This document shows positions 12,461-40,151 of a stretch of 64,000 nt of DNA, piece after piece. The translations under genes were made by a program, and so were the position numbers. The notes beneath the pieces are model-generated. The model had not been told where the DNA came from, did no database searches, and was given only the letters and a program-made list of their open reading frames with translations. Positions within the stretch are counted from its first letter, which is position 1. Every line of letters begins with the position of its first letter. The stretch is from the sequence record LC597490.1; one strand, written 5' to 3'.

Positions 12461-12482
12461 AAAAAGAGAGGTTTCCCTCTCT
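12461..12482 (-). terminator. Intrinsic terminator
   Basis: AGAGAGG-GAAA-CCTCTCT then TTTT on the minus strand, just after the stop of 12498-15743. Confidence 0.85.
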
Positions 12483-12497
12483 ATCGTAAAACTTTTA

Positions 12498-15400
12498 TTA
12501 AACTTGCTTAAATTGTTTCTTAAATAATGTTTTCTTACTTGTAATCAAGAAGCCACTATTTAAGATATAGTTTGTTGCTTCGGGTTCTAATTGGACTGCG
12601 CCATCGAACTTACCTTGTGTGTAAGCAACCTGTCTTGCTTGAGGAATCTCATCTTCGCCATAGACAGTTGTGATTGGCTCACTGTACAGGAAGTGTTCTT
12701 TCTGACCAAGGTAGTAGTATCCATTCTTGATAGTTGGGAACCAGTTATCTTTTGGAACTCTATCCTTGAGTGAACCTTTTAAGAAGTACTTACCATCTAC
12801 TTTGTCCACCCATGTCTGAACCCAGAGATCATTATCCTCTACAACAAACTGAAGGTCTTCTACGCCTCGTGCTCCATCCCAAGTTGTTGGTGATGGTAAT
12901 TCCATTGAGAAGTCTTTCCCTGGACTACAGATACCTGTAAAGTGCTTCACTTCAGGAGAACGCCATACTTTATCAACGCCACCTTCTTCTTTATAGGTTG
13001 TATCCATATGAATTGTAACACTCTCAGGAACTTCGCATTCATATGTTACATAATATTCATCTCCAGCTTTTGGTTCGATACCGCCAGCAGGTGACCAATC
13101 TATATAGTTACCATTACGTTTGAAGTCTCCGATTTTAGCAATGTCATTGTATTCATTGTACTGAATCATGCCGTCTTTGCTTTCAACACGTTTAATATTA
13201 CTTACTCGTGCATTACCTAGTACATCTTTACCATTACCAACCGCACCACGAACTCGAAGTTCTTTTGTGATAGTAGCTTTACGATAAGTAATATCCATAA
13301 CCTTTAATTGAATAGTATCCTCTGCAAGTGGAGTCTCATCTTTCTTCTTCACACTTCCAGCAATAATTTCAACTACATAAGGATTGCCAATTATTTTCGC
13401 TTTTGGATGAATGATAGGTAATGTAATTGGAGCAGGTACAATGATTTTCTTTCCGACAACAAGCTGCGTTGCTTCGTCTGCCTCATTCTCTTTTAGTAAG
13501 TCTTCGATGTAGATAGAGAATTTGTCAGCGATTGTTTTCCAAGTATCTCCTGCTTTTACAACATAGAAGAATGTTACAGCATCTTGTGTGTCAGGAATAA
13601 GATACGTACGTTTAAATTCTTTACGTACATCATTCGGGTTTACGACCCCGCTGAATATCTTTTCTTCTGAAACCCAATCCACATCTTCTTCTTGTGGAGG
13701 TCGGTTAACAATAACAACCAACGTATCACTTTCCTTGTTTGCATTACCTGTCTCATAAGCATTGTGAGAACTCTTTTCTGTATAAGCTTGTGTAGTTCCT
13801 TTAAACGATAATCCAATAACAGGGTTCTTCGTCTTATTTGGAATCTTTACAAACTGTCCTTCGACTAGCATTCCATTTGCTTCATATAAAAGACCAGGGT
13901 TTAATGCAATCAGTTCATCTTCAAGTACACCAAACTTCATAGCGATATATCTTGTTCTATCACCCTTAACAGTGAAGTGCATTTCATCGGGCCATCCTGA
14001 AGTTACATAGTAACGATATTGTTTGCCCTTCGTTAAGTTAGGAGTAAATGTCGGAGCCATTACAATCTCTTCTGTTTCTCCATACACCATAGAACCTCCA
14101 CCATATTGATAGTGAAGAGGAACACCAAGAGCACCTGGTTTCGTTTGACGAAGTACTTCACTATACACTTTATCTTTTGGATTACGTGATAGGTTTGTTC
14201 TATCAAACTTCTTCGATTCACTTTCCCAGTATAAGAGTAAATCTGTTGGACGTTTTACTTCATCTAGTAAGTGGTATTCAAAGTCTGTTGGTAAGCTAAC
14301 GCCTGGCAATGCTGGTGTGTACTTTGGATAGTTAAATTGAATTGTATTCATATCTAACACCATTTCCTTACCAGTGTTATTATTGTGTACAGCAGAAGTT
14401 TGTTGCGTATTCTTCACAATATCTTCTTTGTATTCCATCCAAGAACGGAAGTTAACGAAGTCTACAACAGGAGTCGATTTATCAATACGTCTTCGTAATT
14501 CAATACGTAGGAAGAAATCTTGATCCGTTGGCTTCTTCATTCCTTTATGTGTTCTACTATATGGTTCGAATCTGTCATAAGGAGCATCCATATTCTTTGT
14601 GTAATCAATGAAGTTATAGAAGATACTTGTATCCGTATTCTCTGGCGGACGATAAGATTGGTCCTCCCATACATCCCACTTCAAATTACGAACTAAGCCT
14701 TTCTTCGTTCCAGTTACACTACCATTAGATGGAGCAATATAAGGAGAATCAATATAGCCATATGTTCTTCCTGGCTTCAATCGAATACGTCCTACATTGT
14801 TTTTATATGGACAAGATACTTTACTATACACTACATTGTCAGTAGATGAACTAGAGCGAACCCATAATGTTGTTCCTTCTGGCTCATCAGCTTTGTAGTG
14901 AATACTTGTCACTTCTTTAAATGTTAATGTCTTATCTTGAGCAAGACGTTTTAAATCAATAACAGCTGTCCATTGTCCATTCTTCGAACGTTCCGATGCG
15001 TTACCACCGATTACTTGTAACCAGAATACAGATGGAGATGTTAAGTCATCACTTGATGCCATCCATATTTTAATACGAACGTAATCACACCCCTTATAAT
15101 CAGGAGATGTAGCAGTTAATAATGTCTGTCCATTCGATGCGGGTTTTTCTGTGAAAGTAAGGGGAGCATAAGTATTCCAAGCCCCTCCTTTTACTTTCGC
15201 TTGCATTTCCATACGAATATGAGAAGTTTGTGCTCGTACACCTTTAAAGTCGAATCTTTCACCTGTATGTGTATCAGGGAGGGAGATTGTAACGATATGC
15301 ATTCCGTATTGGATATTAGGAATCACATACGTAGCTGACAAGTTTGGACTTCCTTGTGTAGAGAATGTATATGTTTGTACAGGTTGTTTACCAGCTTCTG

Positions 15401-15743
15401 TTTCAGATTCAACTTTCACTGTAACTTCCTTCGCACTTGTTAAAGCTGCTGCATACACAATTTCTAGTTTGCTACCTGTAGCTTGGAATTGAACGGCTGC
15501 GCCAGCTTGTGTTGTTGACCAAGTTGTTTTACCAGAGTCAATTGTCCATGTCCCTTTTTGAATTAGAAATTCTGGGGCTAATGGCTTGTATAAAGCTTTT
15601 GGTAAATCTACTTGAGCTGATACTTGCGTTGTTCCAACTAAAGCTTCTTTTGTATAGATAGCGTGTGTTTCATAAGAACCTGAGAAGGCTCTGATTCGAC
15701 CATACCAAGATGTACCATAAAAGTTAACACCATACTGTGCCAT
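12498..15743 (-). CDS. Baseplate/tail protein (1081 aa) with two LysM domains
   Basis: HFTVKGDRTRYIAMKFGV...LIALNP...GQFVKIP and YVVKAGDTWKTIADKFSI...LLKEN...LVVGKKIIVP; N-terminal YG-x-x-x-YG repeats. Confidence 0.8.
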   Translation of the reverse strand: MAQYGVNFYGTSWYGRIRAFSGSYETHAIYTKEALVGTTQVSAQVDLPKALYKPLAPEFLIQKGTWTIDSGKTTWSTTQAGAAVQFQATGSKLEIVYAAALTSAKEVTVKVESETEAGKQPVQTYTFSTQGSPNLSATYVIPNIQYGMHIVTISLPDTHTGERFDFKGVRAQTSHIRMEMQAKVKGGAWNTYAPLTFTEKPASNGQTLLTATSPDYKGCDYVRIKIWMASSDDLTSPSVFWLQVIGGNASERSKNGQWTAVIDLKRLAQDKTLTFKEVTSIHYKADEPEGTTLWVRSSSSTDNVVYSKVSCPYKNNVGRIRLKPGRTYGYIDSPYIAPSNGSVTGTKKGLVRNLKWDVWEDQSYRPPENTDTSIFYNFIDYTKNMDAPYDRFEPYSRTHKGMKKPTDQDFFLRIELRRRIDKSTPVVDFVNFRSWMEYKEDIVKNTQQTSAVHNNNTGKEMVLDMNTIQFNYPKYTPALPGVSLPTDFEYHLLDEVKRPTDLLLYWESESKKFDRTNLSRNPKDKVYSEVLRQTKPGALGVPLHYQYGGGSMVYGETEEIVMAPTFTPNLTKGKQYRYYVTSGWPDEMHFTVKGDRTRYIAMKFGVLEDELIALNPGLLYEANGMLVEGQFVKIPNKTKNPVIGLSFKGTTQAYTEKSSHNAYETGNANKESDTLVVIVNRPPQEEDVDWVSEEKIFSGVVNPNDVRKEFKRTYLIPDTQDAVTFFYVVKAGDTWKTIADKFSIYIEDLLKENEADEATQLVVGKKIIVPAPITLPIIHPKAKIIGNPYVVEIIAGSVKKKDETPLAEDTIQLKVMDITYRKATITKELRVRGAVGNGKDVLGNARVSNIKRVESKDGMIQYNEYNDIAKIGDFKRNGNYIDWSPAGGIEPKAGDEYYVTYECEVPESVTIHMDTTYKEEGGVDKVWRSPEVKHFTGICSPGKDFSMELPSPTTWDGARGVEDLQFVVEDNDLWVQTWVDKVDGKYFLKGSLKDRVPKDNWFPTIKNGYYYLGQKEHFLYSEPITTVYGEDEIPQARQVAYTQGKFDGAVQLEPEATNYILNSGFLITSKKTLFKKQFKQV

Positions 15744-15754
15744 AGTCTCCCTCC

Positions 15755-17953
15755 TTAATCTTTATATTGTACGACGAGTTGTGCAAAGTTGTTCATATAA
15801 CAGAATCCTCCGCCCCAAGCATCATATATACAAATACCTTGTGCTTGCCAGTTTACAATCCTTTGAACATACTCTACAGGTATTGGAATAGTTTTCGTTT
15901 GACCAACTTCAAGTGCAGTATCCCAAGATGGAATATAAGAACTCCAGTTGTTTCCTGACCATCCTACTCTATCTCCTACGTAACCACCAAAGTCTCTTGT
16001 ATGGTTATGAGTATAGAATTGAAGTAATCGTCCTTGATGAGCTGGTGCAGTACCACCTTCAATACGTTTCACACGGAAGTAAGCATTGATGATTTTTTTA
16101 CCAGCTAAGTTACTACGGATATCATTCTCACGGAAGTAATACATACTAGCCCAGTGACCACTTGCACCGCCACCATAATAACCACGAGTATGATTGTATC
16201 CTTCTTGTGGTCTCCATCTATGAGTCGTCCAGTTGTAAGCATGGCAGTGATGACTATCATACGTTATCGTCTGGATTGGTTTATCCTTTGTTCTAAATGG
16301 AGTTTCTGTCCACGGGCCACATCCTTTACGGTTACATGCTCTTACCCATGTTGTATATGTTGTTTCAGGTTGGAAGCCATCAATCCAAGCAGCAGTTCCT
16401 CCACCATTATTCATTTCAGCAGGATGCATTGTATGTTTGTAAATATAATACTCTGCTCTAGGAGTTGGGTCCCATCTCATTGTTGTATACCATTGTTCTG
16501 TTCCTTCGAATCGAACATTCTTAACAGGGCCAGGTGGTTGTAATGGGTCAAAGGTAATCGGACCAACCTCTTTCCAATTACTTTCTAGTCCACTAATATC
16601 AATTGCTTTGACACGATACCATATCTTACGTTCCTCAACTTGAAGAACATGAGTAGTACTCGTATTCTTACCTTGATAATAAGTACTCCAGTATCCATTG
16701 TCATGATTACTATTGTGCATAGGAACGGCAACAGTCTGAAGTTCATAGCGGTCTAATCCCATAGGAAGCTTTTGAGATGTAGTGAATGTGTAGGACTTGC
16801 GAAGTCGTCTAGATTTATTACCATAGAAATCAACTGTACGGATTTCCAATGAGATCGTTTGATTCATTAAATTTAACTTGCCGTTTTCGATAGCAAAGTC
16901 TAATGGAATAAATATATTGTTGTCTCTCTCAACTGCTTCTCGTCTGAAGATAAGAGAAGATTTATATCGTTCATTCGGACCATAGATGAAATCAACAACA
17001 TAACACCAGATGTCTGGGCTATTATCTAAACCTAAATTCCATAGAACACTTGCAACAGGTCTTGGACTTGCCGACCAAGATAGCTCAACCGTATTATCTT
17101 CTATTCCATCATGTAGATATCGCAAGTAATCTATTTGATACATATCAGCATTTGGGAAGAACGGGTCAATCTTTTTAACTGGAAGTGGAGGGATATTAGA
17201 AAGCATTTCTAGATACGTAGAAATATGTTCTAAATCTGAAATACCTAGTGAGTCACTAACTTGGTCAATAACAGCAAGCTTAGGAGTATTTGATGCTACC
17301 CAACCTTGTGTGTAACCATGTTCAGCTTCACCAATATTTCGACCATCTAATTTCTCAGTCGGGTCAGTTGGTCTAATCTCTTTTGTTGGAGTATATTGAA
17401 TGCCTTGTAATTCACCAAAGCGTTTTAATAACTCTTGGAGATTTGTGAAGTCCTCTTTACTTGGAGCAACTCTACCTGTGAATAAATCATTAATGATAGC
17501 AATGAATCCATTCTTATATTGAGGAAACCCATTTGCAAAACGAGTGAGGTTTTGTTTCAGTGTTTTAAAATAAGTATCACGAGTTACCTTGTCACCTATC
17601 TTATCTAGTACAGCTAATTGAAGTTCTTCTCCTGGTACATATGAACTGTATTCAAAGCTTTGAACAGCAGAAGTATCACTCGCAGTAGAATCTGAATATG
17701 TTGTCACCGTCCACTGGTATCTTTTCTTATCAGTGAAAGTGAAGTTAATATCAGAACAAGGGACGATAGTTCGTCCCGTGTTTTCATTGTGAGTGTAAAG
17801 GAGTTTACCTAAACTTCCGCTTAGTTCTTCATAGATTCGAATAATTGCTCTTGTCTGTACATGAGGAGGTGTCCAAGCAAAACGTAAAGAAGGAGCAATG
17901 TTTGGACTCATTAAACTTCCATATGCAGGACTCAATCCTTCTGGTCTATTCAT
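15755..17953 (-). CDS. FN3-domain tail/baseplate fibre protein (732 aa)
   Basis: PPGPVKNVRF...MRWDPTP...GFQPETTYTTWVRACNRKGCGPW (FN3), a second FN3-like unit, and an aromatic-rich C-terminal beta domain. Confidence 0.75.
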   Translation of the reverse strand: MNRPEGLSPAYGSLMSPNIAPSLRFAWTPPHVQTRAIIRIYEELSGSLGKLLYTHNENTGRTIVPCSDINFTFTDKKRYQWTVTTYSDSTASDTSAVQSFEYSSYVPGEELQLAVLDKIGDKVTRDTYFKTLKQNLTRFANGFPQYKNGFIAIINDLFTGRVAPSKEDFTNLQELLKRFGELQGIQYTPTKEIRPTDPTEKLDGRNIGEAEHGYTQGWVASNTPKLAVIDQVSDSLGISDLEHISTYLEMLSNIPPLPVKKIDPFFPNADMYQIDYLRYLHDGIEDNTVELSWSASPRPVASVLWNLGLDNSPDIWCYVVDFIYGPNERYKSSLIFRREAVERDNNIFIPLDFAIENGKLNLMNQTISLEIRTVDFYGNKSRRLRKSYTFTTSQKLPMGLDRYELQTVAVPMHNSNHDNGYWSTYYQGKNTSTTHVLQVEERKIWYRVKAIDISGLESNWKEVGPITFDPLQPPGPVKNVRFEGTEQWYTTMRWDPTPRAEYYIYKHTMHPAEMNNGGGTAAWIDGFQPETTYTTWVRACNRKGCGPWTETPFRTKDKPIQTITYDSHHCHAYNWTTHRWRPQEGYNHTRGYYGGGASGHWASMYYFRENDIRSNLAGKKIINAYFRVKRIEGGTAPAHQGRLLQFYTHNHTRDFGGYVGDRVGWSGNNWSSYIPSWDTALEVGQTKTIPIPVEYVQRIVNWQAQGICIYDAWGGGFCYMNNFAQLVVQYKD

Positions 17954-17965
17954 TTAAACTCCTCC

Positions 17966-18979
17966 TTACTTATCAAATATACCTGGATGGGCTGGCATGA
18001 TGTGTAGGTAATCCAAGTCTAATGTTACATCAGCACTTGTAGGTAACTTAGCGATTTCAAACTCAACGATTTGGTTCGGGCCATTACCTTCTACTGTCAT
18101 GATTGGATACATGCTCTTCCATTGTCCTGAAGTAAATACATCAGCTCTGATAGTATCTTTGTTTGTTTTACCACCGATAGTAACAGATACTTCAATTAAA
18201 CTTTCAGGAACTGGATTGTCTACACGACCACGAACGCAGATAGCATAGTCTCCATACTGCAAGCTTGGAGCTTTTACTTTCCACACTGATGTTTTTACTT
18301 TGCCAGTTACTCGTCGTGCTTTGTTCGTAGCTGTTTTATAGTCAGTAATAACTGTACCGCCAGTTGCATCTTCTGCAAGCCATGTACGGTCAAACATACT
18401 GTTTAGTTTTCCAGAGAATAACGTATTTCCTTTTACTTCACCGCCAGTAGACATAGATAGTTTATCAATGATAGACTTCTCGATGCTTGTGGCATTCTCA
18501 GAACTTAGACGAATATCTGCACCAGTTAAACCAGTAGCAGTTAAGTCGATGTTCTTTTTAGCAAGTAAGCCTTGTACTTCTTGTGATAAGTTGATTTTAG
18601 AAGCTCCGCCAACTTGACCTAAATGTTTATGTTCCTCAATTGTATTTCCTGTGTCAGGTTTCCAGTTCGGACCACCATAACGCTTGTCATAGTTTTTGTT
18701 TTCCAACGTATCAATACGACCATCGACTGTTCCTTGGTCAACCCCATCTTTATCAATGTGAGGATTAATACCAAGGATACGTTCGATTGCCATAACCGCA
18801 TCAGCTAATGCGTTGACATGTTCTGCCATGTTATAATCTTTTAAGTTCTCATACCCACTAATGTTTGGGTTAAAGCCAGGATTTGCTTTGTCACGGCTAT
18901 CAAACTTATCTGGATAATGAGACATATTCAAGTCAGTAAACTTTTTATTACCGACAGCATTTGCTTCACTACGAGCCAT
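17966..18979 (-). CDS. Short tail fibre/appendage protein (337 aa) sharing its N-terminal anchor with the giant fibre
   Basis: YPDKFDS...DYNMAEHVNALADAVMAIERILGINP...TVDGRIDTLE matches YPNKINS...DYVMAEDINELQDGIMSIEKTLGVMP...TVKDRMDSLG of the ORF starting at 5102. Confidence 0.75.
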   Translation of the reverse strand: MARSEANAVGNKKFTDLNMSHYPDKFDSRDKANPGFNPNISGYENLKDYNMAEHVNALADAVMAIERILGINPHIDKDGVDQGTVDGRIDTLENKNYDKRYGGPNWKPDTGNTIEEHKHLGQVGGASKINLSQEVQGLLAKKNIDLTATGLTGADIRLSSENATSIEKSIIDKLSMSTGGEVKGNTLFSGKLNSMFDRTWLAEDATGGTVITDYKTATNKARRVTGKVKTSVWKVKAPSLQYGDYAICVRGRVDNPVPESLIEVSVTIGGKTNKDTIRADVFTSGQWKSMYPIMTVEGNGPNQIVEFEIAKLPTSADVTLDLDYLHIMPAHPGIFDK

Positions 18980-18991
18980 TTATCTCACTCC

Positions 18992-19246
18992 TTATTTACA
19001 TTGTTTATAGAAGCCGTCTAATTCGCCAAGCTTTTCAAGAGCACGCTCTAATGCGAATTTCTCACCAAGTTCTTTATTGAAATCTTTTGGGTCTACACAT
19101 GCAGACGTTCCTACGATTTCAAAACCATTCGTTAACTTAATTAAACAGACAGTTGTTTTTGTTCCCATCTTTTGATACTCGCAAGTCACAACCCAAGCCT
19201 TTGCTAAATCCTGTTTATACTGTGTAAATTCTTCAACGTATTTCAT
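18992..19246 (-). CDS. N4 Gp49/Sf6 gp66-family protein (Phage_gp49_66-like); candidate cyclic-nucleotide sponge
   Basis: TTVCLIKLTNGFEIVGTSACVDPKDFNKELGEKFA matches the family signature T-x-C-x-L-x-L-x-NGF-x-V-x-G-x-SACV-x-P-x-x-F. Confidence 0.75.
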   Translation of the reverse strand: MKYVEEFTQYKQDLAKAWVVTCEYQKMGTKTTVCLIKLTNGFEIVGTSACVDPKDFNKELGEKFALERALEKLGELDGFYKQCK

Positions 19247-20856
19247 TACATATCACCCTTCTTTGGTAGTTTTAAAGTAAGTGTTCCTTCTGGAAGAATC
19301 TTAATACCTAAATCTATTAAGCTACCTTCCATCCATGAACCCTCCGTATCAATCTGATAGAAGAAGTCCCCGAATCCTAGTTCAAGGTTTCCATCAGGAG
19401 TTGCATACAAGTTTTGCAAATCTGTGTCAATCAGTGGAGTGTTTGTTGTGAAGTCTTCTTGTGTAGTAAAGATTGTGCTCTGCACTTTATCTGTTATGTC
19501 TTTCCACTTCACTTCGATCTCGTTTACAACAGGAGTCTTATTAGATACTGTCGTAGATAATTCAGCATGTAATTTTAAGAATCCATCCGTAGGAGTTGTC
19601 AGTACAGTATTACCTGTAATGATTTCTAAGCTAGGGTCATTTGGATTATCAAATGCATACTGTGATTGATTCAACTTGAAGTCGATAGATGTCGTGTAGT
19701 AATACTGAAGGAATGCTCTTACGATGTAGTTGAGCTTAATCAACTCTGTTGAGGTAATGGTATATCTGTACGACTCTGGTTTAAACTCTTCATTTGGAAT
19801 CAAACCTTTTGCCGTGATTTTATAGCGGAAGTTGATCTCAGGGTCAATGCGGACTGAATCTTCTTCACGACCCCTTACGCCAAGGTAGGCATCAAAGTTA
19901 CGTAAGTTAGATTCTCTTTTCGGAGCTGTGATTTTTAAATCGTCGCCATCACCAACACCACTTTGGAAGTCATCTTCTTTCCATCCCTCTAATGAAGGAT
20001 TCCATACATGAGGTAGGAACTGGAAGCCTAATCTCTTCTCTTCAAGACTTCTCCAGTAAGCTTCATCCCAAGCCATGTTGTCCCATGTTGCACCAAGTAA
20101 GTTATTTAATGTATGAACATACTCTCTCATTTTAGGAGTAGGTCGTCCATGTTCATCAAACAATGTTCCTTGGAATGCTTTCTCATGAAACTCATTAACT
20201 GTGACATCTTCTGATTCAATACCAAGGTCACGACTAATTGCATTCTCTAAACCAGTCTTAGAACTGTTACCTGGCTTACGGAATACATCTAGTATACGTT
20301 CTTTCAGTTGTGCATTTCGCTCACCGAATAGTCGTTGTAATCCTAGAAGGAATGCGAACTCATCAAATGTATTCCACACATGATGTAATAAAATTGTTTC
20401 GTGCATTGTTCCATCAATTAAGATGTAATCATATGGCTTATTAATGTTTGCATCCATCAAGTACTTTGCAGCTCTTACATATAAATAGCCTTCTTCTCTG
20501 TCGATGATTGCACAATGTTCGTATTCATCTTCAACATAGAAATCTCTTACACTATCATACATAAGAATAGGATATGCAATGTCATTGCTATATCCAAAGA
20601 CTTCTCTGAATGGTCTCATGTCAGCCACAACTGGAAGTGTAATAGGAATACGGTACGTAACATCTACCTGTCCTAAGTTAGCAGTTCCGATGAATTGGTT
20701 TTGAATTGTTTGTTCTAAGTATTCTTGAACATCGTCAAACTCTAAACCAAATGTATCTAAGAACTGTGCTCCAATTGAGTCTGGGTCTTTCGCCATTTTC
20801 ATCCATTGAGGAAGAAGCGCTTGCAGTCTTTTTGTATTTTGACTGAGCATTCTCAT
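19246..20856 (-). CDS. Baseplate wedge protein (536 aa), P2 gpI/T4 gp7-like position
   Basis: LLPQWMKM...FLDTFG...WNTFDEFAFLLGLQRLFGERNAQLKERILDVF; follows the baseplate-J-like gene. Confidence 0.65.
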   Translation of the reverse strand: MRMLSQNTKRLQALLPQWMKMAKDPDSIGAQFLDTFGLEFDDVQEYLEQTIQNQFIGTANLGQVDVTYRIPITLPVVADMRPFREVFGYSNDIAYPILMYDSVRDFYVEDEYEHCAIIDREEGYLYVRAAKYLMDANINKPYDYILIDGTMHETILLHHVWNTFDEFAFLLGLQRLFGERNAQLKERILDVFRKPGNSSKTGLENAISRDLGIESEDVTVNEFHEKAFQGTLFDEHGRPTPKMREYVHTLNNLLGATWDNMAWDEAYWRSLEEKRLGFQFLPHVWNPSLEGWKEDDFQSGVGDGDDLKITAPKRESNLRNFDAYLGVRGREEDSVRIDPEINFRYKITAKGLIPNEEFKPESYRYTITSTELIKLNYIVRAFLQYYYTTSIDFKLNQSQYAFDNPNDPSLEIITGNTVLTTPTDGFLKLHAELSTTVSNKTPVVNEIEVKWKDITDKVQSTIFTTQEDFTTNTPLIDTDLQNLYATPDGNLELGFGDFFYQIDTEGSWMEGSLIDLGIKILPEGTLTLKLPKKGDM

Positions 20857-20868
20857 GATATTCCTCCT

Positions 20869-21669
20869 TTATTCAACATTGATATTTTGCAAGTACAGTC
20901 GCTCATCCCATCTAGCTGAGATATTACCAACGAAACGTGGCATATCTTTTACTGTAATGCTTTGTAGGATAACATCACTAATCTTAGGAGACGTTGCTTT
21001 TAATGTTCTTAACATGTCAGCATACAAGAATGTTTCTCCTGGTTGCAATTTACCCATATATGATTTGGCATCTTGAATGAGATGCGCCTTAATTACTTCT
21101 TTTTCTTCAGTCGAAGCACTGCTTCTATACATGACTCTAACCTTAATAGATACAGGAATCAAGAGTGGTGTTGCGATTTCTGCATAAACACCAGCAGCTT
21201 TTATCTTATCCACTTTCTCTTCTACTTGTGAGAGGATTTCATTAATACGTTCTAAGTCATCTGTAATGATGTGGATTGTGAATGAACCGCCACCATGAGT
21301 GTACTCTTTGAACTTCACATCAATAACGCCATCTACTTCAAGAGCAGCTAGACGTACAGCTGTTTTATTTGCACCAGCGATAACGAAAACCTGTTTTGTA
21401 ATACGTGCTCTGTAGTCATCATCTGACTCATCTTCTTTACGAGTACAGCTTAACAATTCACCGATTAAGTCTAAGTATTGATTTGTTGCAGTCGAGATAA
21501 AAGCTGATAGCTTCAGGTTTAAGATTTCATGATATACATCACCGAAGCGCTCACTTAGAATTTCCATTAATGTACGAGCAACTGCTCCAGGATTTACTTC
21601 ATTGATACCTGTCTTTTCTTCTAAGCGCTTTAACAAGTCTTTTAGAATATCTTCATATAGTTTATTCAT
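20869..21669 (-). CDS. Baseplate J-like protein (short, 266 aa)
   Basis: PGAVARTLME...STATNQYLDLIG...RKEDESDDDYRARI...LEVDGVIDV is the Baseplate_J pattern. Confidence 0.85.
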   Translation of the reverse strand: MNKLYEDILKDLLKRLEEKTGINEVNPGAVARTLMEILSERFGDVYHEILNLKLSAFISTATNQYLDLIGELLSCTRKEDESDDDYRARITKQVFVIAGANKTAVRLAALEVDGVIDVKFKEYTHGGGSFTIHIITDDLERINEILSQVEEKVDKIKAAGVYAEIATPLLIPVSIKVRVMYRSSASTEEKEVIKAHLIQDAKSYMGKLQPGETFLYADMLRTLKATSPKISDVILQSITVKDMPRFVGNISARWDERLYLQNINVE

Positions 21670-22169
21670 TAGCTTTCATCCTTTTGATAGATATTTGAAA
21701 CGCCTGTTGTTAAATCGAATACCAGAGGAATATAGAATCGAACAGCATTGCCATCATAAATACGAATAAAGAAAACGATTTCGCTTTCACTTACAGGAAT
21801 AGGTTTGATATCTATGTTGCCTTCACTATATAAGTTTGCATATGTCAGGCTTCGTAGAATTGTAGCTACTCCACGTTCTGCTGTTTCTCTCGTATTTGGT
21901 TCTCCAATTAAGTCAGAAAGGTCTGCACCGATATTTGCATGATGATACCAATCTGGATTCTCTGTTTGAATACGATTCTTGATAATCGTTTGTTCAACTT
22001 CATAACCTAGTCCAAGAGAGAGATCGTAGATGAACACTCCATCATCTTGTTTATCAGTTGTGATAGAACCATCTGGTTGTCTATATAGAAGATTTCCTTC
22101 TTCATCTGTTTTCGGAACGCTTCTAATTAAGTCTCCATCTTCTGAGAATGCGAGGTCATATCGAATCAT
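21669..22169 (-). CDS. Baseplate sheath-initiator (gp25/gpW-like)
   Basis: IKNRIQTENPDW...IGADLSDLIGEPN; immediately upstream of the J-like gene. Confidence 0.75.
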   Translation of the reverse strand: MIRYDLAFSEDGDLIRSVPKTDEEGNLLYRQPDGSITTDKQDDGVFIYDLSLGLGYEVEQTIIKNRIQTENPDWYHHANIGADLSDLIGEPNTRETAERGVATILRSLTYANLYSEGNIDIKPIPVSESEIVFFIRIYDGNAVRFYIPLVFDLTTGVSNIYQKDES

Positions 22170-22639
22170 TTTCTGTCACCTCTTTGTGTTAGATTGTAAT
22201 CTTGCATAAGTTGTTTTGCCTTTGGAGAATAATGCTGTAATGATTCTTTTGAAAGGAAAGATGGACTATCTGGATTTACATACTGTCCATTCCATTGAAG
22301 CCCAAGTGGGTTTGTTCTTACGTTTGTGGATTTACTGAAGATGTTTACATTGTCACCGTAGAGGTAGAGACTGTTTGTATTGGGGTCAAGTCGAATGCCG
22401 ACATTACCATTACCAAATAAGTCTACTGAGCCATCATCATTCATTTTAAAAATAGCATCTGTTAGTGGATGTTTCATTGCTACTTCTTTACGTTGAATTC
22501 TACGTTGTTGTCTATCTATCTCTGTATAATCTAGGACATCAGGACGAACACGATATGAATCAACTTTTTCTTTCCAAGGAGCTGGACGGTATTCTATTTC
22601 ACCGCCACCTAAATCAAATTCAAATGGATTATCTGCCAT
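22166..22639 (-). CDS. Probable spike beta-helix protein
   Basis: IFKMNDDGSVDLFGNGNVGIRLDPNTNSLYLYGDNVNIFS beta-strand repeats; lies between the OB-fold spike gene and the gp25-like gene. Confidence 0.5.
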   Translation of the reverse strand: MADNPFEFDLGGGEIEYRPAPWKEKVDSYRVRPDVLDYTEIDRQQRRIQRKEVAMKHPLTDAIFKMNDDGSVDLFGNGNVGIRLDPNTNSLYLYGDNVNIFSKSTNVRTNPLGLQWNGQYVNPDSPSFLSKESLQHYSPKAKQLMQDYNLTQRGDRK

Positions 22640-22651
22640 GCTATCACTCCT

Positions 22652-23005
22652 TTACATATACCATAGATTTGGTGGGATATCTCTTGTCTGTGAGCTATCG
22701 TATAGTTTGTCATTGCTATCTTTATGAACAACTGAGATATAAGGACGGTCTACTTTTCCACCACGGAAAGCAATGCTTACACGGTTACCAATCTCAACAC
22801 TCTCACGGAATATACCATCACCATCTTGAGGAAGAGGAACGTTTCTAGATTCACGCCAGTTATGACCTTGATGGTCTTTCCACATTACATCAACTGTTTG
22901 CTCAATATAACTTACACCTACGACATAACCGATGATATCTTGGCGAATGTTTTGCACCATAGGTTGAAGCATCTTTTTAATCTGTTGTTGTACTGGGTTA
23001 TTCAT
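22652..23005 (-). CDS. Central-spike OB-fold protein (gpV/gp5-N-like)
   Basis: IGYVVGV...TVDV...VPLP...VEIGNRVSIAFRGGKVDRPYI. Confidence 0.65.
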   Translation of the reverse strand: MNNPVQQQIKKMLQPMVQNIRQDIIGYVVGVSYIEQTVDVMWKDHQGHNWRESRNVPLPQDGDGIFRESVEIGNRVSIAFRGGKVDRPYISVVHKDSNDKLYDSSQTRDIPPNLWYM

Positions 23006-23009
23006 TTAC

Positions 23010-24311
23010 TCACCTCCATGAATTTGGTCCGACATATACATCAAAACCTGGATACGATTGATAGTCTGCTTCAAATAAATCAACATGGATAAATCCATTA
23101 CCAGGCTTTACATTTTGGAAGCCCAACATAGAAATAATATCTGCTAATCTATAAGTCTCTTCTTTGTTATATCCTGTTTGAATTTTTACCGCAAGACCTA
23201 TTCCATAAAATGTATTGGCTTTTGGAGTAAAAGATTGTAATATGGAAAGTTTATTTTTCACGAGGAGGTTTTTTGTTTTAAATTCTTGATGAATTAAGTC
23301 GAGTGCTTTTAGCATCAAAGGGTGTACAAGTAATGTACATCCTACGTGACCAGACTCATATCGAGAACTTGGAAGTCTCACTAATCGTTTCTCATTTAAG
23401 AAGTCTCTTCTATATAATGCATACATTTCTTTACGAGGATATTCTCTTGAGATTTCAATTGTTCTCTCATGAATTTTAGGGACTGGAAGGATTAATGAAA
23501 CTTGTCCAACTACTGGAGCTACCTTTACTTCTTTTGCATCAGCAAAGAATTGTAATGAAGCAAACTGAGCTGTCTTCTTTTCTTCTGGTTTAGCTGGTGT
23601 TGTAGAAGCTCCAGATGCTTTAGGTGGAGCGAAACGTCTTGCACATACATATCTAGCTCCATACCAATTTGTATTCAAACTACGAAGCCCTAGACCGCCC
23701 CATTCACCTTTACCAGATGCCATATCAATGAACTTGTCTCCACCCATTGAGATAGCACAGTGAACTACGTTAAATGAACCAACACCAGGAACATTAACTC
23801 TATGCCCACTACCGTCTGTAGATTTAAAGAAGATACAATCACCAGGTAGTAATTGCTCTCTAGGGATAATCAATTGTCCTGCTTGGTTTGCAATCTGCTC
23901 TCCAGTGTAACCACCTATGTTGGGGCCACCTGCTAATTCAATTGCTTGCCTTGTTAGTGTGGAACAGTCACCAGAGTTCTTATTGATTATGTCACGTACT
24001 GCCTGTGAATAAGGAGCACTCTTATGTTCATTCATTAGTTTCTGAGCCATAGCTGCAATATTCTCTCCGTTGAATCCTGATCCACCTTGAAATTGGAAGT
24101 TACCATCAGGAGTAGCAGCAGGGACGTCAGTACTAACGCCTGGGTCCCCACCATCTGTATACTCTGCTTCTTCCTCTTCTTTACGCTTCTTGTTTATTTC
24201 TTGAGCATATTCCTCAATCCATTTGAGACGTTCTTCAGCATTCTGTTTCATCGCCTCTAACTTCTTGGAATAATTATCTTCCCTTTGTTCGAACTTTTGA
24301 TTTCTAGCCAT
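23010..24311 (-). CDS. Virion wall hydrolase: NlpC/P60 peptidase plus degenerate peptidase-M15-like domain
   Basis: GDCSTLT (C116), LLPGDCIFF, VHCAISMGGDKFID (H184); C-terminal LGFQNVKPGNGFIHVDL. Confidence 0.85.
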   Translation of the reverse strand: MARNQKFEQREDNYSKKLEAMKQNAEERLKWIEEYAQEINKKRKEEEEAEYTDGGDPGVSTDVPAATPDGNFQFQGGSGFNGENIAAMAQKLMNEHKSAPYSQAVRDIINKNSGDCSTLTRQAIELAGGPNIGGYTGEQIANQAGQLIIPREQLLPGDCIFFKSTDGSGHRVNVPGVGSFNVVHCAISMGGDKFIDMASGKGEWGGLGLRSLNTNWYGARYVCARRFAPPKASGASTTPAKPEEKKTAQFASLQFFADAKEVKVAPVVGQVSLILPVPKIHERTIEISREYPRKEMYALYRRDFLNEKRLVRLPSSRYESGHVGCTLLVHPLMLKALDLIHQEFKTKNLLVKNKLSILQSFTPKANTFYGIGLAVKIQTGYNKEETYRLADIISMLGFQNVKPGNGFIHVDLFEADYQSYPGFDVYVGPNSWR

Positions 24312-24323
24312 TTAACTCACTCC

Positions 24324-25598
24324 TTACGGCCCACTTCCTGGTCCTTTGTACGGTGGATAACCAGCGTAGTCTCCCCAACTACCAGGAGGACCGATATCAA
24401 TATGAACGAATCCACCACCAGGTTGTACAGCCCTGAATCCTAAATTGTAAGCCATGTCAGCAATCTGATATGCTCTTGCCCTGCTTCTTCCTTCAACACC
24501 AATATCAATTGCCATTCCACATCCATGGAAGTCATTATCACCAGGTCGATAAGCAGAGTTTACTAGCATCTTTCCGTTGGTTAATAGGTTTTGTGATTTC
24601 ATAGTATTGTAGAGTAATTCAACAAATGGAATAAACTCAGGAGCTTCCATCATTGTACATCCACTTAAATTACTTACAAAGCGACTAGCATCTAAACGTT
24701 GATGCCCTGTATAACCTTTACGAGCAGCTAATATCTTTGCTCTGTAATCACTACGACTTTGAGCAGGTGGAGCATTTACTTTACCATTACTAATAGTTGC
24801 ACCTTGTACACCACCAGGGAAGTTAGTAGCGTAATTACCGCCACCGCCTCCACCACCTTGCGCTTTCTCTGGAAGACTGTATAGGAATGGGTCTGTGATT
24901 TTATAACCAAGACCCTCCATGATTTCTTTAATACCTTTTGGATAAGAAGAACCATAACCACTGTTACTATATCCTACGTAGAACCAAGCGAGTTGATAAA
25001 GCTCTACCTTCTTCATATCTTCTGGACCGAATCGGAATTTAGCAGGATTCTTTTGCCATGGCAACCAATAGGTATTACGTTTACCAATTAACTCTTCTAC
25101 CCCACACTCGATTTGATACTTTGTATCCTTCTGTAACTTACCAGTATCGAATCCATACTCTGATGCTTTAACCTGCATTAACCCATAATAACCAGCACTA
25201 GAACGAGTAGTAGGTTCCCCAGCAGATTCCTGAATCATAATAGCTTTAACGAATACTGGATTGACTCCGCCCTTTTCTTTACATACCTGAACGATTAAGT
25301 CATTCCATTTATCTGTTCCAGCTACACGACCTCTCATACCCGTTTGACCATGGGCACTTTTCTCAGGTCCTTTCCAGTCTGCAACTGTTGGCATTGTTCC
25401 AGTGAAACTACCACCACCGCCTTCGGTAGTAGTAGTCTCTCCTCCTTCACCAGAACCTTTCTTCTTTTTCTTATTCGCTTCAATTTCTTTCGCATACTCT
25501 TCAATCCACTTGAGACGTTCCTCGGCGTTAACCTTCATCGCCTCAAGCTTGGCGGTATACTTATCTTCACGATTGGTTTGTTTATCGCCCCTTGCCAT
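24324..25598 (-). CDS. Virion wall hydrolase: lytic transglycosylase (SLT) plus peptidase M15
   Basis: VKAIMIQESAG (E124)...GYYGLMQV; VNSAYRP...FHGCGMAIDI...GFVHIDI (Zn ligands H, D, H). Confidence 0.9.
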   Translation of the reverse strand: MARGDKQTNREDKYTAKLEAMKVNAEERLKWIEEYAKEIEANKKKKKGSGEGGETTTTEGGGGSFTGTMPTVADWKGPEKSAHGQTGMRGRVAGTDKWNDLIVQVCKEKGGVNPVFVKAIMIQESAGEPTTRSSAGYYGLMQVKASEYGFDTGKLQKDTKYQIECGVEELIGKRNTYWLPWQKNPAKFRFGPEDMKKVELYQLAWFYVGYSNSGYGSSYPKGIKEIMEGLGYKITDPFLYSLPEKAQGGGGGGGNYATNFPGGVQGATISNGKVNAPPAQSRSDYRAKILAARKGYTGHQRLDASRFVSNLSGCTMMEAPEFIPFVELLYNTMKSQNLLTNGKMLVNSAYRPGDNDFHGCGMAIDIGVEGRSRARAYQIADMAYNLGFRAVQPGGGFVHIDIGPPGSWGDYAGYPPYKGPGSGP

Positions 25599-25612
25599 TC
25601 ATCCTCACCTCT

Positions 25613-28600
25613 TTATTGCGTTTTATCTGCACCGTAATTATCAAGGTCTTGGTAGCTTGTTGTGAACTTACGGTCATCTGCATCTGTGTCAGCCATGAAG
25701 TTCATGAAGCCACCGACTGCTGCGAAGAATCCATCACCAGAACCATCGAAGCCTAGACCTTGCAAGAAGTTGTCCATTGAACCTTGTTTCGTATCACCGA
25801 CAACCATACCTTTGTGACCGTTAATACCAGCTGTAAACTCTTTACCTTGGTGCATTAATGGCATCATCAGTACAGCTTGGTTCGTAGTCTTACTTCGTCT
25901 CCACTTCTCGAATAAACTTTCAACTAACCATCCAGCAGTTAAACTGAATATCCATCCAAGTGGTGTTCCTTTCGAAGCAAATGTTCCAACGCCTTTAATG
26001 AACTTAGAACTTGATTTCATATCTTTCATTGCACCAGGTAATTTAGAAGCAGTTAGAAGTGAACGGGCCGCTAATTTCTTAGTGCCTTTCATAATCTTAC
26101 CATCCTTACCAGGTACTCCTCCAGATTTTAACCATTCCTGCGCCTTTTTGGAAACATTATCTGCGGCGGTTTTTACACGTTCCCAAGCCTGAGCCTCATT
26201 CTTACCTTCTTTACCTTTTGCTTTATAGTAAGAATCCAGTGCCTTCTTCAGTTCATTTGTTTCAGGAGTATCAGGAAGTGTATCCACAAGGTTCTTCATA
26301 CTCTTCTCGACTATCCATCCACCAGCTGCTTTACCTTTGGTCATGAGCGTTCGACCTGTTGCACTATTAGCGAACTTACGAGTTGCCGCATTACCAGCAC
26401 GTAATCCCATAACAGTTGCTCCAGCTAACATTCCGACAGATGCCCACCAGTTAGAATGAGCCAACATTGCTTTGTCATCAATAACAACAACAGCATCAGG
26501 AGTAACACTTGAAATGAATCCAGTCTCATGAGAGAAGTGATGAACAACAGCTTCAACTCCGATGTTACCGTTCATATCAGAAACAGAGTCTGACATATAA
26601 ATCATGTCATGTGGTTTCAGTGTTGGCGTTCCAATGATTGTGATACGTCCTTTATACATATCCTTCATGTAATCACGTACTGTACTTGCAGAGTAGTAAA
26701 GAGCTTGCTTCTCTGTAGTAAACATATCCCAACCTGGAATTGTACGAGAGATTAATGGAAGGTCAACAACTGCTGTACGTTGCATTGAGAAGTCAATGTC
26801 GTAGTCTGCATAAACTGGAGGTGTTGGTTTCCCGCCGTAGTTACCAACAACAATTGTATACATACCATCAGAAGATGCTTTGATTTGGTTAGATATAATA
26901 TCCATTCCATCGTCAATATAATGAAGCTGACAATAAGGACGTCTATATTCTGTATCAAGCGTACGATCCCATGACTTCGTTTTCTCATTATAAGCATACG
27001 TACTGTCGTAACGATATGCCATGTTCCAATAAGGTTTTCCGAAGAACAAGGTAGAACGAGTTTCGAATGGATGTACTGCCGCAATATAATCTGGGAAACA
27101 GTAAGAAATGTTTGTAGCTACATCCCAAATTGTTTGATTATATAGAGGCATTAAGATATTGTCCTCGTCACCGCCTTGGAATTTAAGAATGAACCCATCC
27201 CACTTCATAGGAATACGAGTACCATCTTCATAAATCCATTGGCTAAATGTTTGCAGTCCATTTGCAGAGTAAATGTTTTGAGCAGCTTCTCCATAGTTTT
27301 CATTGAAGAACTTGAAGTTTGCATCTGGTGTTCTATCACCTGGACGACCAAAGTGAGCTACCCCTAATGGATTGTCACGGAAGAATCTGTTTTCGCTGGC
27401 TACGTTGATTACGTCTTTTGCCCATGAACCTTTAGATGTTAAGAGCTTACAGATAATGTCTCGTGGTTCTTGAGCATTAAATAGTTTCGCTGTTTTATCA
27501 TCAGGGTCACCAGAGATAACACTTGTTAATTCCAGCCCGTCACCTTGAGCAACGAGTGTAATAACATCGTTTGTATCCATCTCTGTAATCTTACCGTTGA
27601 ATACAGTTGGTAATCTTCGTACAGATGAACCATAACCCATTCGTAAATGGATACGAGCACCAACTTCTAACATCATACTGTTTAATAAGTCTGAGCGAGA
27701 ATCTAAGATTGCATCACTTGGATTATCCAGTACTAAATTATCCCAGAAGCTATATGCAAAGCTGTCGTACATTTCACTTGTTGGTCGTGCCGTTAAGTTA
27801 CTGTATACGTTTGTCATGGAGATAACAGCTGTGTCAGCTACTTGTTTTCTACTTCTATGAACATCAATAGATTGGATTGCGTTGAATCCGTAGAAGTTAT
27901 CCCATAAACGATATGAACCCATCCAACGTCCTTCATCAATAATGAAGAATTGGAACGTAGGGAATGCTCGACATAAGCGACCTCTCATATCATAAGACAG
28001 CATATTGTGAGCCATTTGAGAGAATGCTTCTTCAGGAGATTGCTTGAATAATAGACGGTTGTATTCTTCATCTTTGATGTCTTCTACTTTTTGTTGGTCT
28101 TCATAGTTCTTCGTTTCTTGAGACTTACCATCTCCGAACCAATTGTCCCATAAAGAACCATCTCCACCGAATGTTTTACTCCATCCTAAAGCTAGAAGGT
28201 CAGTTGCCCATTTACCAATCAACATGTTTGTATTACCGCCAGTTGGAATCTTAACTTGGTCTAGGTAACCTTTTAATTTTCCATCCTTATGCATCTTCAT
28301 GTATGACTCATAAATTTTCTTAACTTCACTAGTAGACTTTTTCTTAATCTCACTGAGTAATGCCTTCGCCTTTTCCTTACCAAGAACATCTTCCAGAATC
28401 TTAGAATCCTCTAAGTCCTTGATTAATGCATCCTTATCACTTGTTGCAACGTTAACAGTATGAGAAGACTTACCATCAACTAACTTCATAATGTCAGGGT
28501 CTACAACTTGTCGTGGAGAACGGTAACGGTTCTTATCTTCATTGTATAAAGACTTCCACACACTCATGATAGAAGGGAATGCACCTTCCTTAATACTATC

Positions 28601-32575: not shown

Positions 32576-32591
32576 ATGAAAACCTCCTTTA

Positions 32592-40139: not shown

Positions 40140-40151
40140 CCCAATTCCTCC

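What the first reader, a model, noticed from the sequence alone, without database searches (positions are those of the whole stretch)
18992..19246. Candidate anti-CBASS sponge embedded among baseplate genes
This 84-aa non-structural-looking gene is translationally coupled to the baseplate operon and has the N4 Gp49/Sf6 gp66 signature (NGFEIVGTSACVDP). My recollection, which should be verified, is that the SPO1 cGAMP sponge Acb4 belongs to this family. Placement in a late operon would time it to late infection, when CBASS is generally activated.
Basis: partly seen in the sequence, partly recalled or inferred. Interest (0 to 1): 0.65.

Follow-up and report, generated by a model that had tools for sequence, protein, structure and literature searches.

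The report
Acb4-family sponge gene in baseplate operon
This small gene of a giant Bacillus cereus phage belongs to the known Acb4 family of viral "sponge" proteins, which soak up bacterial CBASS alarm nucleotides. The protein is already listed in the published family catalogue, so the only unusual point is that it was inserted into the late baseplate operon.

Summary
The window is Bacillus phage vB_BceM_WH1 (LC597490.1). The ORF at 18992..19246 (-) is gp086, 84 aa.

- **Family:** it matches Pfam PF13876 (67 bits, cut-off 27). It matches the solved SPO1 Acb4-cGAMP structure 9e4w by sequence (E 3.8e-7 alone, 4.7e-15 as a profile).
- **Fold:** the AlphaFold2 model has pLDDT 96.5. Its top 13 Foldseek hits are all 9e4w chains (TM 0.87).
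- **Prior knowledge:** the Acb4 paper (PMC11722364) equates PF13876 with the Acb4 family, and its Table S3 lists this exact protein. It is catalogued but untested.
- **Pocket:** all five base-contacting residues of SPO1 Acb4 are kept. The three phosphate-contact positions differ from SPO1 but resemble N4 Acb4 (V and E identical, F for Y), a validated sponge.
- **Context:** the gene sits in a 14-gene late tail/baseplate run with junction gaps of 16 nt or less. It has a one-base stop/start overlap and no nearby promoter above chance.
- **Origin:** it is an insertion. Three genomes carry it; KLEB27-3 and four IMG/VR contigs have the same gene order without it.
- **Selection:** it is under purifying selection (dN/dS 0.06-0.14).

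Binding, tetramer formation and late timing are inferred, not shown. The finding is ordinary in kind and modestly interesting in context.

The parts
18992..19246 (-). gp086 (BCO16139.1; UniProt A0A7R7J305), an 84-aa Acb4-family (PF13876) protein, coordinates including the stop codon
   Evidence: ORF. PF13876 at 67.4 bits. 9e4w Acb4 at E 3.8e-7 alone and 4.7e-15 as a profile. AF2 pLDDT 96.5 and Foldseek TM 0.87 to 9e4w. Listed in Table S3 of PMC11722364. dN/dS 0.06-0.14.
19088..19129 (-). Codons 40-53: the conserved family motif, covering strand beta3 and the start of the beta3-alpha4 ligand loop. It includes F42 and E43, homologous to the SPO1 Acb4 guanine-stacking and guanine-reading residues F48 and E49.
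   Evidence: G41, F42, E43, G46, T47, S48, A49 and C50 are invariant in 21 relatives. The residue map comes from ungapped HMMER alignments to 9e4w and the contact list in PMC11722364.
19253..19261 (-). Shine-Dalgarno-like GAAGGGTGA, 6 nt before the gp086 start and inside the 3' end of gp087
   Evidence: Read from the sequence.
19244..19248 (-). TAATG junction: the gp087 stop and the gp086 start share base 19246
18980..18991 (-). 12-nt spacer carrying the Shine-Dalgarno sequence (GGAGTGA) of the downstream gene gp085
19246..20856 (-). gp087, 536 aa, upstream neighbour; virion structural protein family (phrog_21059; homologue of 0305phi8-36 ORF162)
20869..21669 (-). gp088, Baseplate_J / baseplate wedge subunit
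   Evidence: PF04865 at E 1.3e-12; phrog_6 at E 8.9e-27
17966..18979 (-). gp085, 337 aa, downstream neighbour, annotated as a virion structural protein. In relatives without gp086 it directly follows the gp087 homologue.
12498..46229 (-). Run of 14 co-directional tail/baseplate genes in which every junction gap is 16 nt or less; this is the presumed late transcription unit that contains gp086
   Evidence: Junction table; ORF list.
12465..12482 (-). Terminator-like hairpin plus T-run, 16 nt after the last gene of the run (gp083) and in the only 93-nt intergenic gap nearby

Best explanation
gp086 is an Acb4-type nucleotide sponge. By homology it should form a small homotetramer whose inter-protomer pockets sequester CBASS cyclic dinucleotides, so the host's Cap effector is never switched on. 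It keeps the SPO1-type guanine-reading pair (K30, E43) and stacking Phe (F42). Its most likely ligands are therefore mixed-base signals such as 3'3'-cGAMP and cUA-type dinucleotides, and not the housekeeping c-di-AMP of its Gram-positive host. The gene was inserted as a single cassette into the spacer between two baseplate-module genes in the WH1/Edson lineage. It is now most likely co-transcribed and translationally coupled with late virion genes, so sponge production would coincide with the stage at which several CBASS systems are reported to fire. Shown here: family membership, fold, conservation of base-contact residues, insertion, purifying selection and tight operon packing. Inferred: tetramer formation, ligand binding and specificity, late timing and anti-CBASS effect.
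For: - **Family and fold:** PF13876 at 67.4 bits. 9e4w (SPO1 Acb4 with 3'3'-cGAMP) is the only significant PDB sequence hit (E 3.8e-7; profile E 4.7e-15). The AF2 model has pLDDT 96.5, and the 13 best Foldseek PDB hits are all 9e4w chains (TM 0.82-0.88, rmsd 1.2-2.2 A).
- **Published function of the family:** PMC11722364 shows that SPO1 Acb4 is a tetrameric cGAMP sponge, equates PF13876 with the family, and reports that all eight tested homologues bound 3'3'-cGAMP. Its Table S3 lists this exact protein.
- **Pocket:** SPO1 K36, F48, E49, F62 and N63 correspond to K30, F42, E43, F56 and N57, all identical. V56 and I66 correspond to C50 and L60. At SPO1 Y57, T70 and K81 the protein has V51, F64 and E75; N4 Acb4 has V, Y and E there.
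- **Closest tested relative:** N4 Acb4 is 45% identical over 73 residues (E 3e-21). It is experimentally a cyclic-dinucleotide sponge (PMC13640721, PMC12657230).
- **Insertion:** KLEB27-3 and four IMG/VR contigs have collinear gp090-to-gp083 homologues with no gene between the gp087 and gp085 homologues. The whole KLEB27-3 genome has no PF13876-like ORF.
- **Selection:** dN/dS is 0.06-0.14, and gp086 is more conserved than its neighbours.
- **Expression context:** no promoter or terminator signal above chance lies near it, and junction gaps are 16 nt or less across 14 genes.
- **Late CBASS activation:** supported by the literature.
Against: - No binding, oligomer or expression data exist for this protein, and only a monomer could be modelled.
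- All three SPO1 phosphate-backbone contacts are replaced, so affinity and ligand range cannot be read off the SPO1 structure.
- The closest validated relative, N4 Acb4, prefers c-di-AMP and lacks the K/E pair, so specificity within this sub-branch is not settled.
- SPO1 Acb4 activity appears early, at about 15 min, so late-only expression might give less protection.
- Phage-specific promoters would not be seen by a sigma-70 consensus scan.
- The one B. cereus CBASS found in the literature search uses a Nuc-SAVED effector. Its signal was not checked here, and no Acb4 binding data for cyclic trinucleotides were found.
Confidence: 0.8

Rival explanations
1. It is an Acb4-fold sponge with a different ligand range from the SPO1 prototype. 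Candidates are c-di-AMP-type signals as for N4 Acb4, 2'3'-linked decoys, or larger cyclic oligonucleotides. In that case it would counter a different set of signalling defences than cGAMP-type CBASS.
For: - All three SPO1 phosphate-contact positions differ (V51, F64, E75) and resemble N4 Acb4: V and E are identical, and F stands where N4 has Y.
- N4 Acb4 binds c-di-AMP at 111 nM and cUAMP about 100-fold more weakly.
- The Edson orthologue differs from WH1 at three contact-homologous positions (56, 57, 64), which is 3 of its 7 substitutions (P 0.034). This hints that the pocket is being tuned.
Against: - The guanine-reading pair K30/E43 and the stacking F42 are SPO1-like. F42 and E43 are invariant and K30 nearly so (20 of 21) in the 21 closest relatives. 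N4 has T/T at K30/E43.
- All eight homologues tested in PMC11722364 bound 3'3'-cGAMP, and those from Gram-positive hosts did not bind c-di-AMP.
Confidence: 0.12
2. It is a small baseplate structural or assembly protein that merely shares the alpha-beta-beta-beta-alpha fold, as its position in the operon would suggest.
For: It sits between virion genes, overlaps the upstream stop codon, and is conserved at that place in three genomes.
Against: - It is absent from the same, otherwise collinear, baseplate module of KLEB27-3 and four IMG/VR relatives, so the baseplate does not need it.
- Its nearest homologues lie in small-gene, replication or packaging contexts of unrelated phages.
- No tail or baseplate structure appears among the 50 Foldseek PDB hits listed.
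- The record annotates gp083-085 as virion structural proteins but gp086 only as hypothetical. The basis of those labels is unknown.
Confidence: 0.03
3. It is an RNA- or ribosome-binding regulator, using the dsRBD-like or hibernation-factor-like fold from which Acb4 is thought to derive.
For: Foldseek also lists YfiA/protein Y, RNase III dsRBDs and Rv2632c/Rv1738. Pfam gives a weak Rv2632c-like match (E 0.11).
Against: - Those hits are far weaker (TM 0.39-0.59, E 0.008 or worse) than the Acb4 hits (E about 1e-7, TM 0.87).
- The Rv2632c-like score of 12.9 bits is below its cut-off of 25.
- The Acb4 base-contact residues are conserved.
Confidence: 0.03

Closest known systems
Bacillus phage SPO1 Acb4 (gp1.3; PDB 9e4w), founding member of the Acb4 / PF13876 family
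   Same: - Same Pfam family and the same fold (TM 0.87).
- Small single-domain protein of a Bacillus phage.
- Identical residues at the five base-contact positions (K, F, E, F, N).
- Same expected mechanism: sequestration of cGAMP- or cUA-type CBASS signals, sparing c-di-AMP.
   Different: - Only about 26% identical.
- 12 residues shorter (84 aa against 96 aa), and in the model alpha4 and alpha5 form one long helix.
- The phosphate-contact residues Y57, T70 and K81 are replaced by V, F and E.
- The SPO1 gene lies in a cluster of small uncharacterised genes and its activity appears by about 15 min. gp086 lies inside a late baseplate operon.
Escherichia phage N4 Acb4 (gp48)
   Same: - It is the closest experimentally studied relative: 45% identity over 73 residues, E 3e-21.
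- It resembles gp086 at SPO1 positions V56, Y57, T70 and K81: C, V and E are identical, and N4 has Y where gp086 has F.
- It is a validated cyclic-dinucleotide sponge.
   Different: - N4 has T/T where gp086 and SPO1 have the guanine-reading K/E pair.
- N4 Acb4 binds c-di-AMP tightly and thereby triggers the guard systems Panoptes and PanDA.
- It has a C-terminal extension of about 30 residues.
- It lies in the N4 anti-signalling hotspot between replication genes and the virion RNA polymerase gene, not in a tail operon.
Haemophilus phage SuMu gene 36 (PF13876 homologue)
   Same: It is also embedded in a late morphogenesis cluster, between Mu gp37-like head genes and the tail sheath gene. A structural-module position is therefore not unique to WH1.
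   Different: It comes from a Gram-negative Mu-like phage, lacks the K/E pair, and sits at a head-tail boundary rather than inside the baseplate genes. It is uncharacterised.
Other phage signal sponges (Acb2, Tad1, Tad2, Sequestin)
   Same: They use the same strategy: small homo-oligomers with inter-protomer pockets that sequester immune nucleotides. A Tad2-like gene lies about 600 nt from a gp086-like gene in locus L008.
   Different: Their folds are unrelated. No sequence or structure match to them was returned.

Membership tests
Acb4 / PF13876 (Phage_gp49_66) sponge family | Match to the Pfam PF13876 model above its gathering score | tested here: met
   67.4 bits against a cut-off of 27, E 1.6e-18, covering profile positions 7-78 of 82.
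Acb4 / PF13876 (Phage_gp49_66) sponge family | Sequence homology to the solved prototype (SPO1 Acb4, 9e4w) | tested here: met
   phmmer E 3.8e-7, as the only hit. A profile of 21 relatives gives E 4.7e-15 over chain residues 16-87 of 97.
Acb4 / PF13876 (Phage_gp49_66) sponge family | Protomer fold: N-terminal helix, three antiparallel strands, long C-terminal helical arm | tested here: met
   The AF2 model (pLDDT 96.5) has H9-18, E19-27, E31-38, E43-49 and H58-83. Foldseek ranks 1-13 are all 9e4w chains, with TM 0.82-0.88.
Acb4 / PF13876 (Phage_gp49_66) sponge family | Homotetrameric pinwheel with four inter-protomer ligand pockets | not testable with these tools
   Only single-chain prediction was available. 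PMC11722364 reports confident AF3 tetramers for all eight homologues it modelled.
Acb4 / PF13876 (Phage_gp49_66) sponge family | [quoted passage not shown] | not testable with these tools
   No biochemical data exist for this protein. All eight tested family members bound 3'3'-cGAMP.
Acb4 / PF13876 (Phage_gp49_66) sponge family | Small protein encoded by a phage or prophage, and included in the published family list | tested here: met
   84 aa, encoded by phage vB_BceM_WH1. The identical sequence is listed as A0A7R7J305 in Table S3 of PMC11722364.
SPO1-type Acb4 pocket (subtype, not a family-defining feature) | Nucleobase-contact residues K36, F48, E49 (guanine) and F62, N63 (adenine) | tested here: met
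   K30, F42, E43, F56 and N57 are identical. The offset was checked against all ten published contact residues in the 9e4w chain.
SPO1-type Acb4 pocket (subtype, not a family-defining feature) | Phosphate-backbone contact residues Y57, T70, K81 | tested here: not met
   gp086 has V51, F64 and E75. The validated sponge N4 Acb4 has V, Y and E at these positions. These residues therefore belong to the SPO1 protein, not to the family.
Phage baseplate structural proteins | Conserved presence in the baseplate module of related phages, and structural similarity to known tail or baseplate proteins | tested here: not met
   Absent from the collinear modules of KLEB27-3 and four IMG/VR contigs. No tail or baseplate hit appears among the 50 Foldseek matches listed.
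Rv2632c-like (PF08962) / dsRBD-like RNA binders | Family model match above cut-off, or a strong fold match | tested here: not met
   PF08962 scores 12.9 bits against a cut-off of 25. Foldseek gives TM 0.39-0.59 at E 0.008 or worse.

The most novel reading that the evidence does not exclude
Hard-wiring the sponge gene into a late virion operon may be an adaptive timing strategy rather than an accident of insertion. Co-transcription with the very structural and assembly genes that trigger many CBASS systems would scale the antidote with the trigger. It might also shorten the time during which sponge-sensing guard systems of the Panoptes or PanDA type could detect it. The idea fits the context census: about ten of 21 interpretable contexts of gp086-like genes lie next to or inside terminase, portal, head or tail modules.
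Probability: 0.3. Interest if true: 0.5.

Novelty: already known. Interest (0 to 1): 0.25.

Why it matters
The finding correctly names an anti-defence gene in a poorly annotated 230-kb B. cereus-group phage, where the record still calls it hypothetical. It also documents a clean case of a sponge gene inserted as a single cassette into a conserved baseplate operon. If the late placement is functional, it would link sponge timing to the late-stage triggers of CBASS. That matters for understanding how counter-defence genes are scheduled, but it adds no new kind of system.

Tried and rejected
- **Genome search:** Using A1 instead would have biased the test towards E43, so the phylum test was dropped. 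Snippets of Table S3 show Bacillus-phage members without E at that position, so no general Gram-positive rule is claimed.
- **NCBIfam:** no model matches.
- **Literature on WH1:** none found, so the basis of the record's "virion structural protein" labels is unknown.
- **Own promoter or terminator:** the scan found fewer promoter-like sites than shuffled sequence (38 against 57 expected). Only a 9-of-12 site lies 400 nt upstream, inside gp087, and one weak hairpin lies inside gp087. Both were rejected as chance.
- **Composition:** GC and GC3 of gp086 do not differ from its neighbours, so composition gives no sign of a recent transfer.
- **Paralogues:** none in the window, and a single tblastn place in the whole WH1 record.
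- **Weak PDB hit:** the profile hit to uridylate kinase 1ybd (E 0.042) was dismissed as chance.
- **Tetramer modelling:** not possible with the single-chain predictor.

Full report
**1. Where we are**

Megablast places window 17000-21000 at 100% identity on Bacillus phage vB_BceM_WH1. This is LC597490.1, a 229,829-bp phage of Bacillus cereus, and window position equals record position minus 62,000. The finding's ORF is the record's gp086 (BCO16139.1), annotated only as "hypothetical protein". Nearly the whole window is one long minus-strand virion-gene cluster.

**2. The observation**

- The ORF runs from ATG to TAA at 18992..19246 (-) and encodes 84 aa.
- Pfam PF13876 matches at 67.4 bits against a cut-off of 27. 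Five PHROG families, all of unknown function, match at E 7.2e-9 or better, with a sixth only marginal at E 0.0095. NCBIfam has no model for it.
- The stop codon of gp087 and the start codon of gp086 share one base (TAATG). A GAAGGGTGA Shine-Dalgarno-like element lies 6 nt upstream. gp085 starts 12 nt after the gp086 stop, behind GGAGTGA.
- The neighbours are tail or baseplate genes:
  - gp088 is Baseplate_J / baseplate wedge.
  - gp087 belongs to a virion structural protein PHROG and is homologous to 0305phi8-36 ORF162.
  - gp084 has an FN3 domain, gp083 has LysM plus DUF4815, and gp092 has NlpC/P60.

**3. Is it Acb4-like?**

- Against all PDB sequences, the only hit of the single protein is 9e4w, "anti-CBASS 4 (Acb4)", at E 3.8e-7.
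- A profile of 21 relatives raises this to E 4.7e-15 over chain residues 16-87 of 97.
- An AlphaFold2 model built on that alignment is very confident (pLDDT 96.5, pTM 0.85). Its elements are helix 9-18, strands 19-27, 31-38 and 43-49, and helix 58-83.
- Foldseek against the PDB returns chains of 9e4w as ranks 1-13 (TM 0.82-0.88, rmsd 1.2-2.2 A, about 26% identity).
- Only after these come much weaker matches to Rv2632c, Rv1738, ribosome hibernation factors and dsRBDs. The Acb4 paper reports hibernation factors, ribonucleases and dsRBD proteins as distant structural relatives.
- That paper (PMC11722364) shows that SPO1 gp1.3 (Acb4) is a tetrameric sponge holding four 3'3'-cGAMP molecules. It identifies PF13876 as the family (1,331 homologues) and reports that all eight tested homologues bound 3'3'-cGAMP.
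- Its Table S3 contains this exact 84-aa protein under A0A7R7J305, Bacillus phage vB_BceM_WH1.

The protein is already catalogued as an Acb4 homologue, though it has never been tested individually.

**4. The pocket**

The HMMER alignments to 9e4w have no gaps. The chain carries one extra N-terminal residue, and all ten published contact residues fall on the expected letters of the chain, which validates the map: gp086 number = paper number minus 6.

| SPO1 Acb4 residue | Role in SPO1 Acb4 | gp086 | N4 Acb4 |
|---|---|---|---|
| K36 | reads guanine | K30 | T |
| F48 | stacks on guanine | F42 | F |
| E49 | reads guanine | E43 | T |
| F62 | adenine pocket | F56 | F |
| N63 | adenine pocket (backbone contact) | N57 | N |
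| V56 | hydrophobic packing | C50 | C |
| I66 | hydrophobic packing | L60 | L |
| Y57 | phosphate contact | V51 | V |
| T70 | phosphate contact | F64 | Y |
| K81 | phosphate contact | E75 | E |

- The five base-contact residues are identical to SPO1. In the 21 closest relatives, F42, E43 and C50 are invariant and K30 is present in 20 of 21.
- The three phosphate contacts differ from SPO1. This is not evidence against nucleotide binding, because phage N4 gp48 has C, V, Y and E at the positions of V56, Y57, T70 and K81.
- N4 gp48 is the closest experimentally studied relative (45% identity over 73 residues, E 3e-21). It is a proven cyclic-dinucleotide sponge: its c-di-AMP Kd is 111 nM, and it triggers Panoptes and PanDA.
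- N4 has T/T where SPO1 and gp086 have the guanine-reading K/E pair.
- gp086 thus combines an N4-like backbone region with an SPO1-like guanine pocket.
- In the paper, Acb4 proteins from phages of Gram-positive hosts avoided c-di-AMP. Together these points lead me to infer a preference for mixed-base signals (cGAMP, cUA) and avoidance of c-di-AMP. This is an inference from about ten residues and is not a measurement.

**5. Operon and timing**

- From 46229 down to 12498, fourteen minus-strand genes are joined by gaps of -4 to 16 nt, most of them 12-nt spacers with a Shine-Dalgarno sequence.
- The next gap, of 93 nt, holds the only intergenic terminator-like hairpin, at 12482..12465.
- Promoter-like sites are fewer than in shuffled sequence (38 against 57), and none lies convincingly ahead of gp086.
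- The gene is therefore most likely made with the late tail and baseplate proteins. Phage-specific promoters cannot be excluded by a sigma-70 scan.
  - Prohead proteases activate CD-NTases "during late stages".
  - A B. cereus type II CBASS moved into B. subtilis showed effector activity only after 35-45 min.
- In contrast, SPO1 Acb4 activity appears at about 15 min, and its gene sits among small uncharacterised genes.

**6. It is an insertion**

- Edson (about 90% nucleotide identity over the 4-kb query) and a 229-kb Logan contig (ERR14864770) carry the gene at the same place, with the same junction geometry.
- Bacillus phage KLEB27-3 has collinear homologues of gp090, 089, 088, 087, 085, 084 and 083 at 30-50% identity. 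Only 15 nt separate its gp087 and gp085 homologues.
- A profile search of all six frames of the complete KLEB27-3 genome finds nothing (best E 0.88). The window control scores 3.7e-45 and shows a single copy.
- Four IMG/VR jumbo-phage contigs show the same collinear order with no PF13876 gene.
- The more distant relatives 0305phi8-36 and Moorella phage MTATph1 also lack it at this locus.
- Comparing the junctions suggests how the cassette went in. The KLEB27-3 spacer ahead of its gp085 homologue resembles the sequence now ahead of gp086. This suggests that the cassette entered the spacer, took over the old ribosome-binding site and brought a new one for gp085. This is an inference from two sequences.
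- Composition gives no sign of foreign origin.
- The nearest homologues outside the clade (50-62% identity) are in other Bacillus phages and in metagenomic phages.

**7. Selection**

- Pairwise dN/dS for gp086 is 0.06-0.14, at dS 0.43-1.23.
- Between WH1 and the Logan genome, 15% of gp086 residues differ. The figures for its neighbours are 27% (gp087), 40% (gp085) and 60% (gp084).
- The gene is therefore functional and well maintained at this position.

**8. Is a late-module position unusual for the family?**

I collected contexts for relatives from annotated phages, encoding contigs and 20 IMG/VR loci.

| Context | Loci |
|---|---|
| Next to or inside packaging or morphogenesis genes | L008, L009 and L013 (before terminase); L016 (between small and large terminase); L028 (after terminase); L014, L036 and L041 (after portal or MuF); SuMu (between head genes and tail sheath); the WH1 clade |
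| Replication or nucleotide-metabolism neighbours | L015, L031, L042, L043, L045, L039, N4 |
| Arrays of small genes | Kirov, YungSlug, L030, L033 |
| Uninterpretable | six loci |

Proximity to late modules is thus common in this sub-branch. Sitting inside the baseplate genes was seen only in the WH1 clade. The sample is small and was not chosen at random. A position just upstream of a terminase gene may also belong to a separate transcription unit.

**9. Verdict**

The gene belongs to a known, recently characterised family and is already in that family's published list. Binding, oligomer state, ligand range and timing remain inferred. The modest added value lies in three points: the clean evidence for insertion, the mixed SPO1/N4 character of the pocket, and the recurrent association of this sub-branch with late modules.

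No broken genes were met. Profile HMMs were built from alignments A1 and A2 for searching only.

Noticed in passing
window 5112..5297 (-): gp080 is a 61-aa ORF wedged between two giant structural genes, with a 1-nt gap upstream. It has no Pfam or PHROG match. KLEB27-3 has a 192-bp ORF (gp049) at the syntenic place, between its 4.5-kb structural gene and its tail-fibre gene. This may be a conserved small virion or chaperone gene.
   Followed up: partly
window 12498..46229 (-): Fourteen genes, including three of 2,025-2,515 aa, are packed with junction gaps of 16 nt or less. Most junctions are a stereotyped 12-nt spacer carrying a Shine-Dalgarno sequence. gp086 is one of four junctions in this run that overlap instead.
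   Followed up: yes
L008:6973-8294: In an 88-kb metagenomic phage contig, a Tad2-like gene (PF11195) lies about 600 nt upstream of a gp086-like Acb4 gene. Both lie just before the large terminase gene, forming a two-sponge island at the edge of the packaging module.
   Followed up: no
L002:6001-6255 (Edson orthologue) compared with window 18992..19246: Three of the seven amino-acid differences between WH1 and Edson gp086 fall on positions homologous to SPO1 ligand contacts (56, 57, 64), with hypergeometric P 0.034. None of the 13 differences in the ERR14864770 copy does. This could reflect tuning of the pocket, or chance.
   Followed up: partly
L012:2920-3291 (phage N4): The PF13876 ORF of N4 is labelled gp48 in EF056009, and the Panoptes paper (PMC12657230) also calls it N4gp48. 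The Pfam family name, however, says "N4 Gp49". This numbering mismatch is worth knowing when comparing sources.
   Followed up: yes
L003:3989-4369 (Kirov_7), P0007, L012:2920-3291: Several close relatives carry C-terminal extensions of 30-45 residues beyond the Acb4 core, whereas gp086 is a minimal core-only version. The literature reports frequent fusions of Acb4 to Tad2 or Sequestin domains. These extensions were not examined.
   Followed up: no
window 19249..20856 (-) (gp087): Only the N-terminal 216-294 residues or so of gp087 are shared with 0305phi8-36 ORF162 and Moorella phage MTATph1. The full length is shared only with KLEB27-3-like phages, so the C-terminal half is a clade-specific module.
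   Followed up: no
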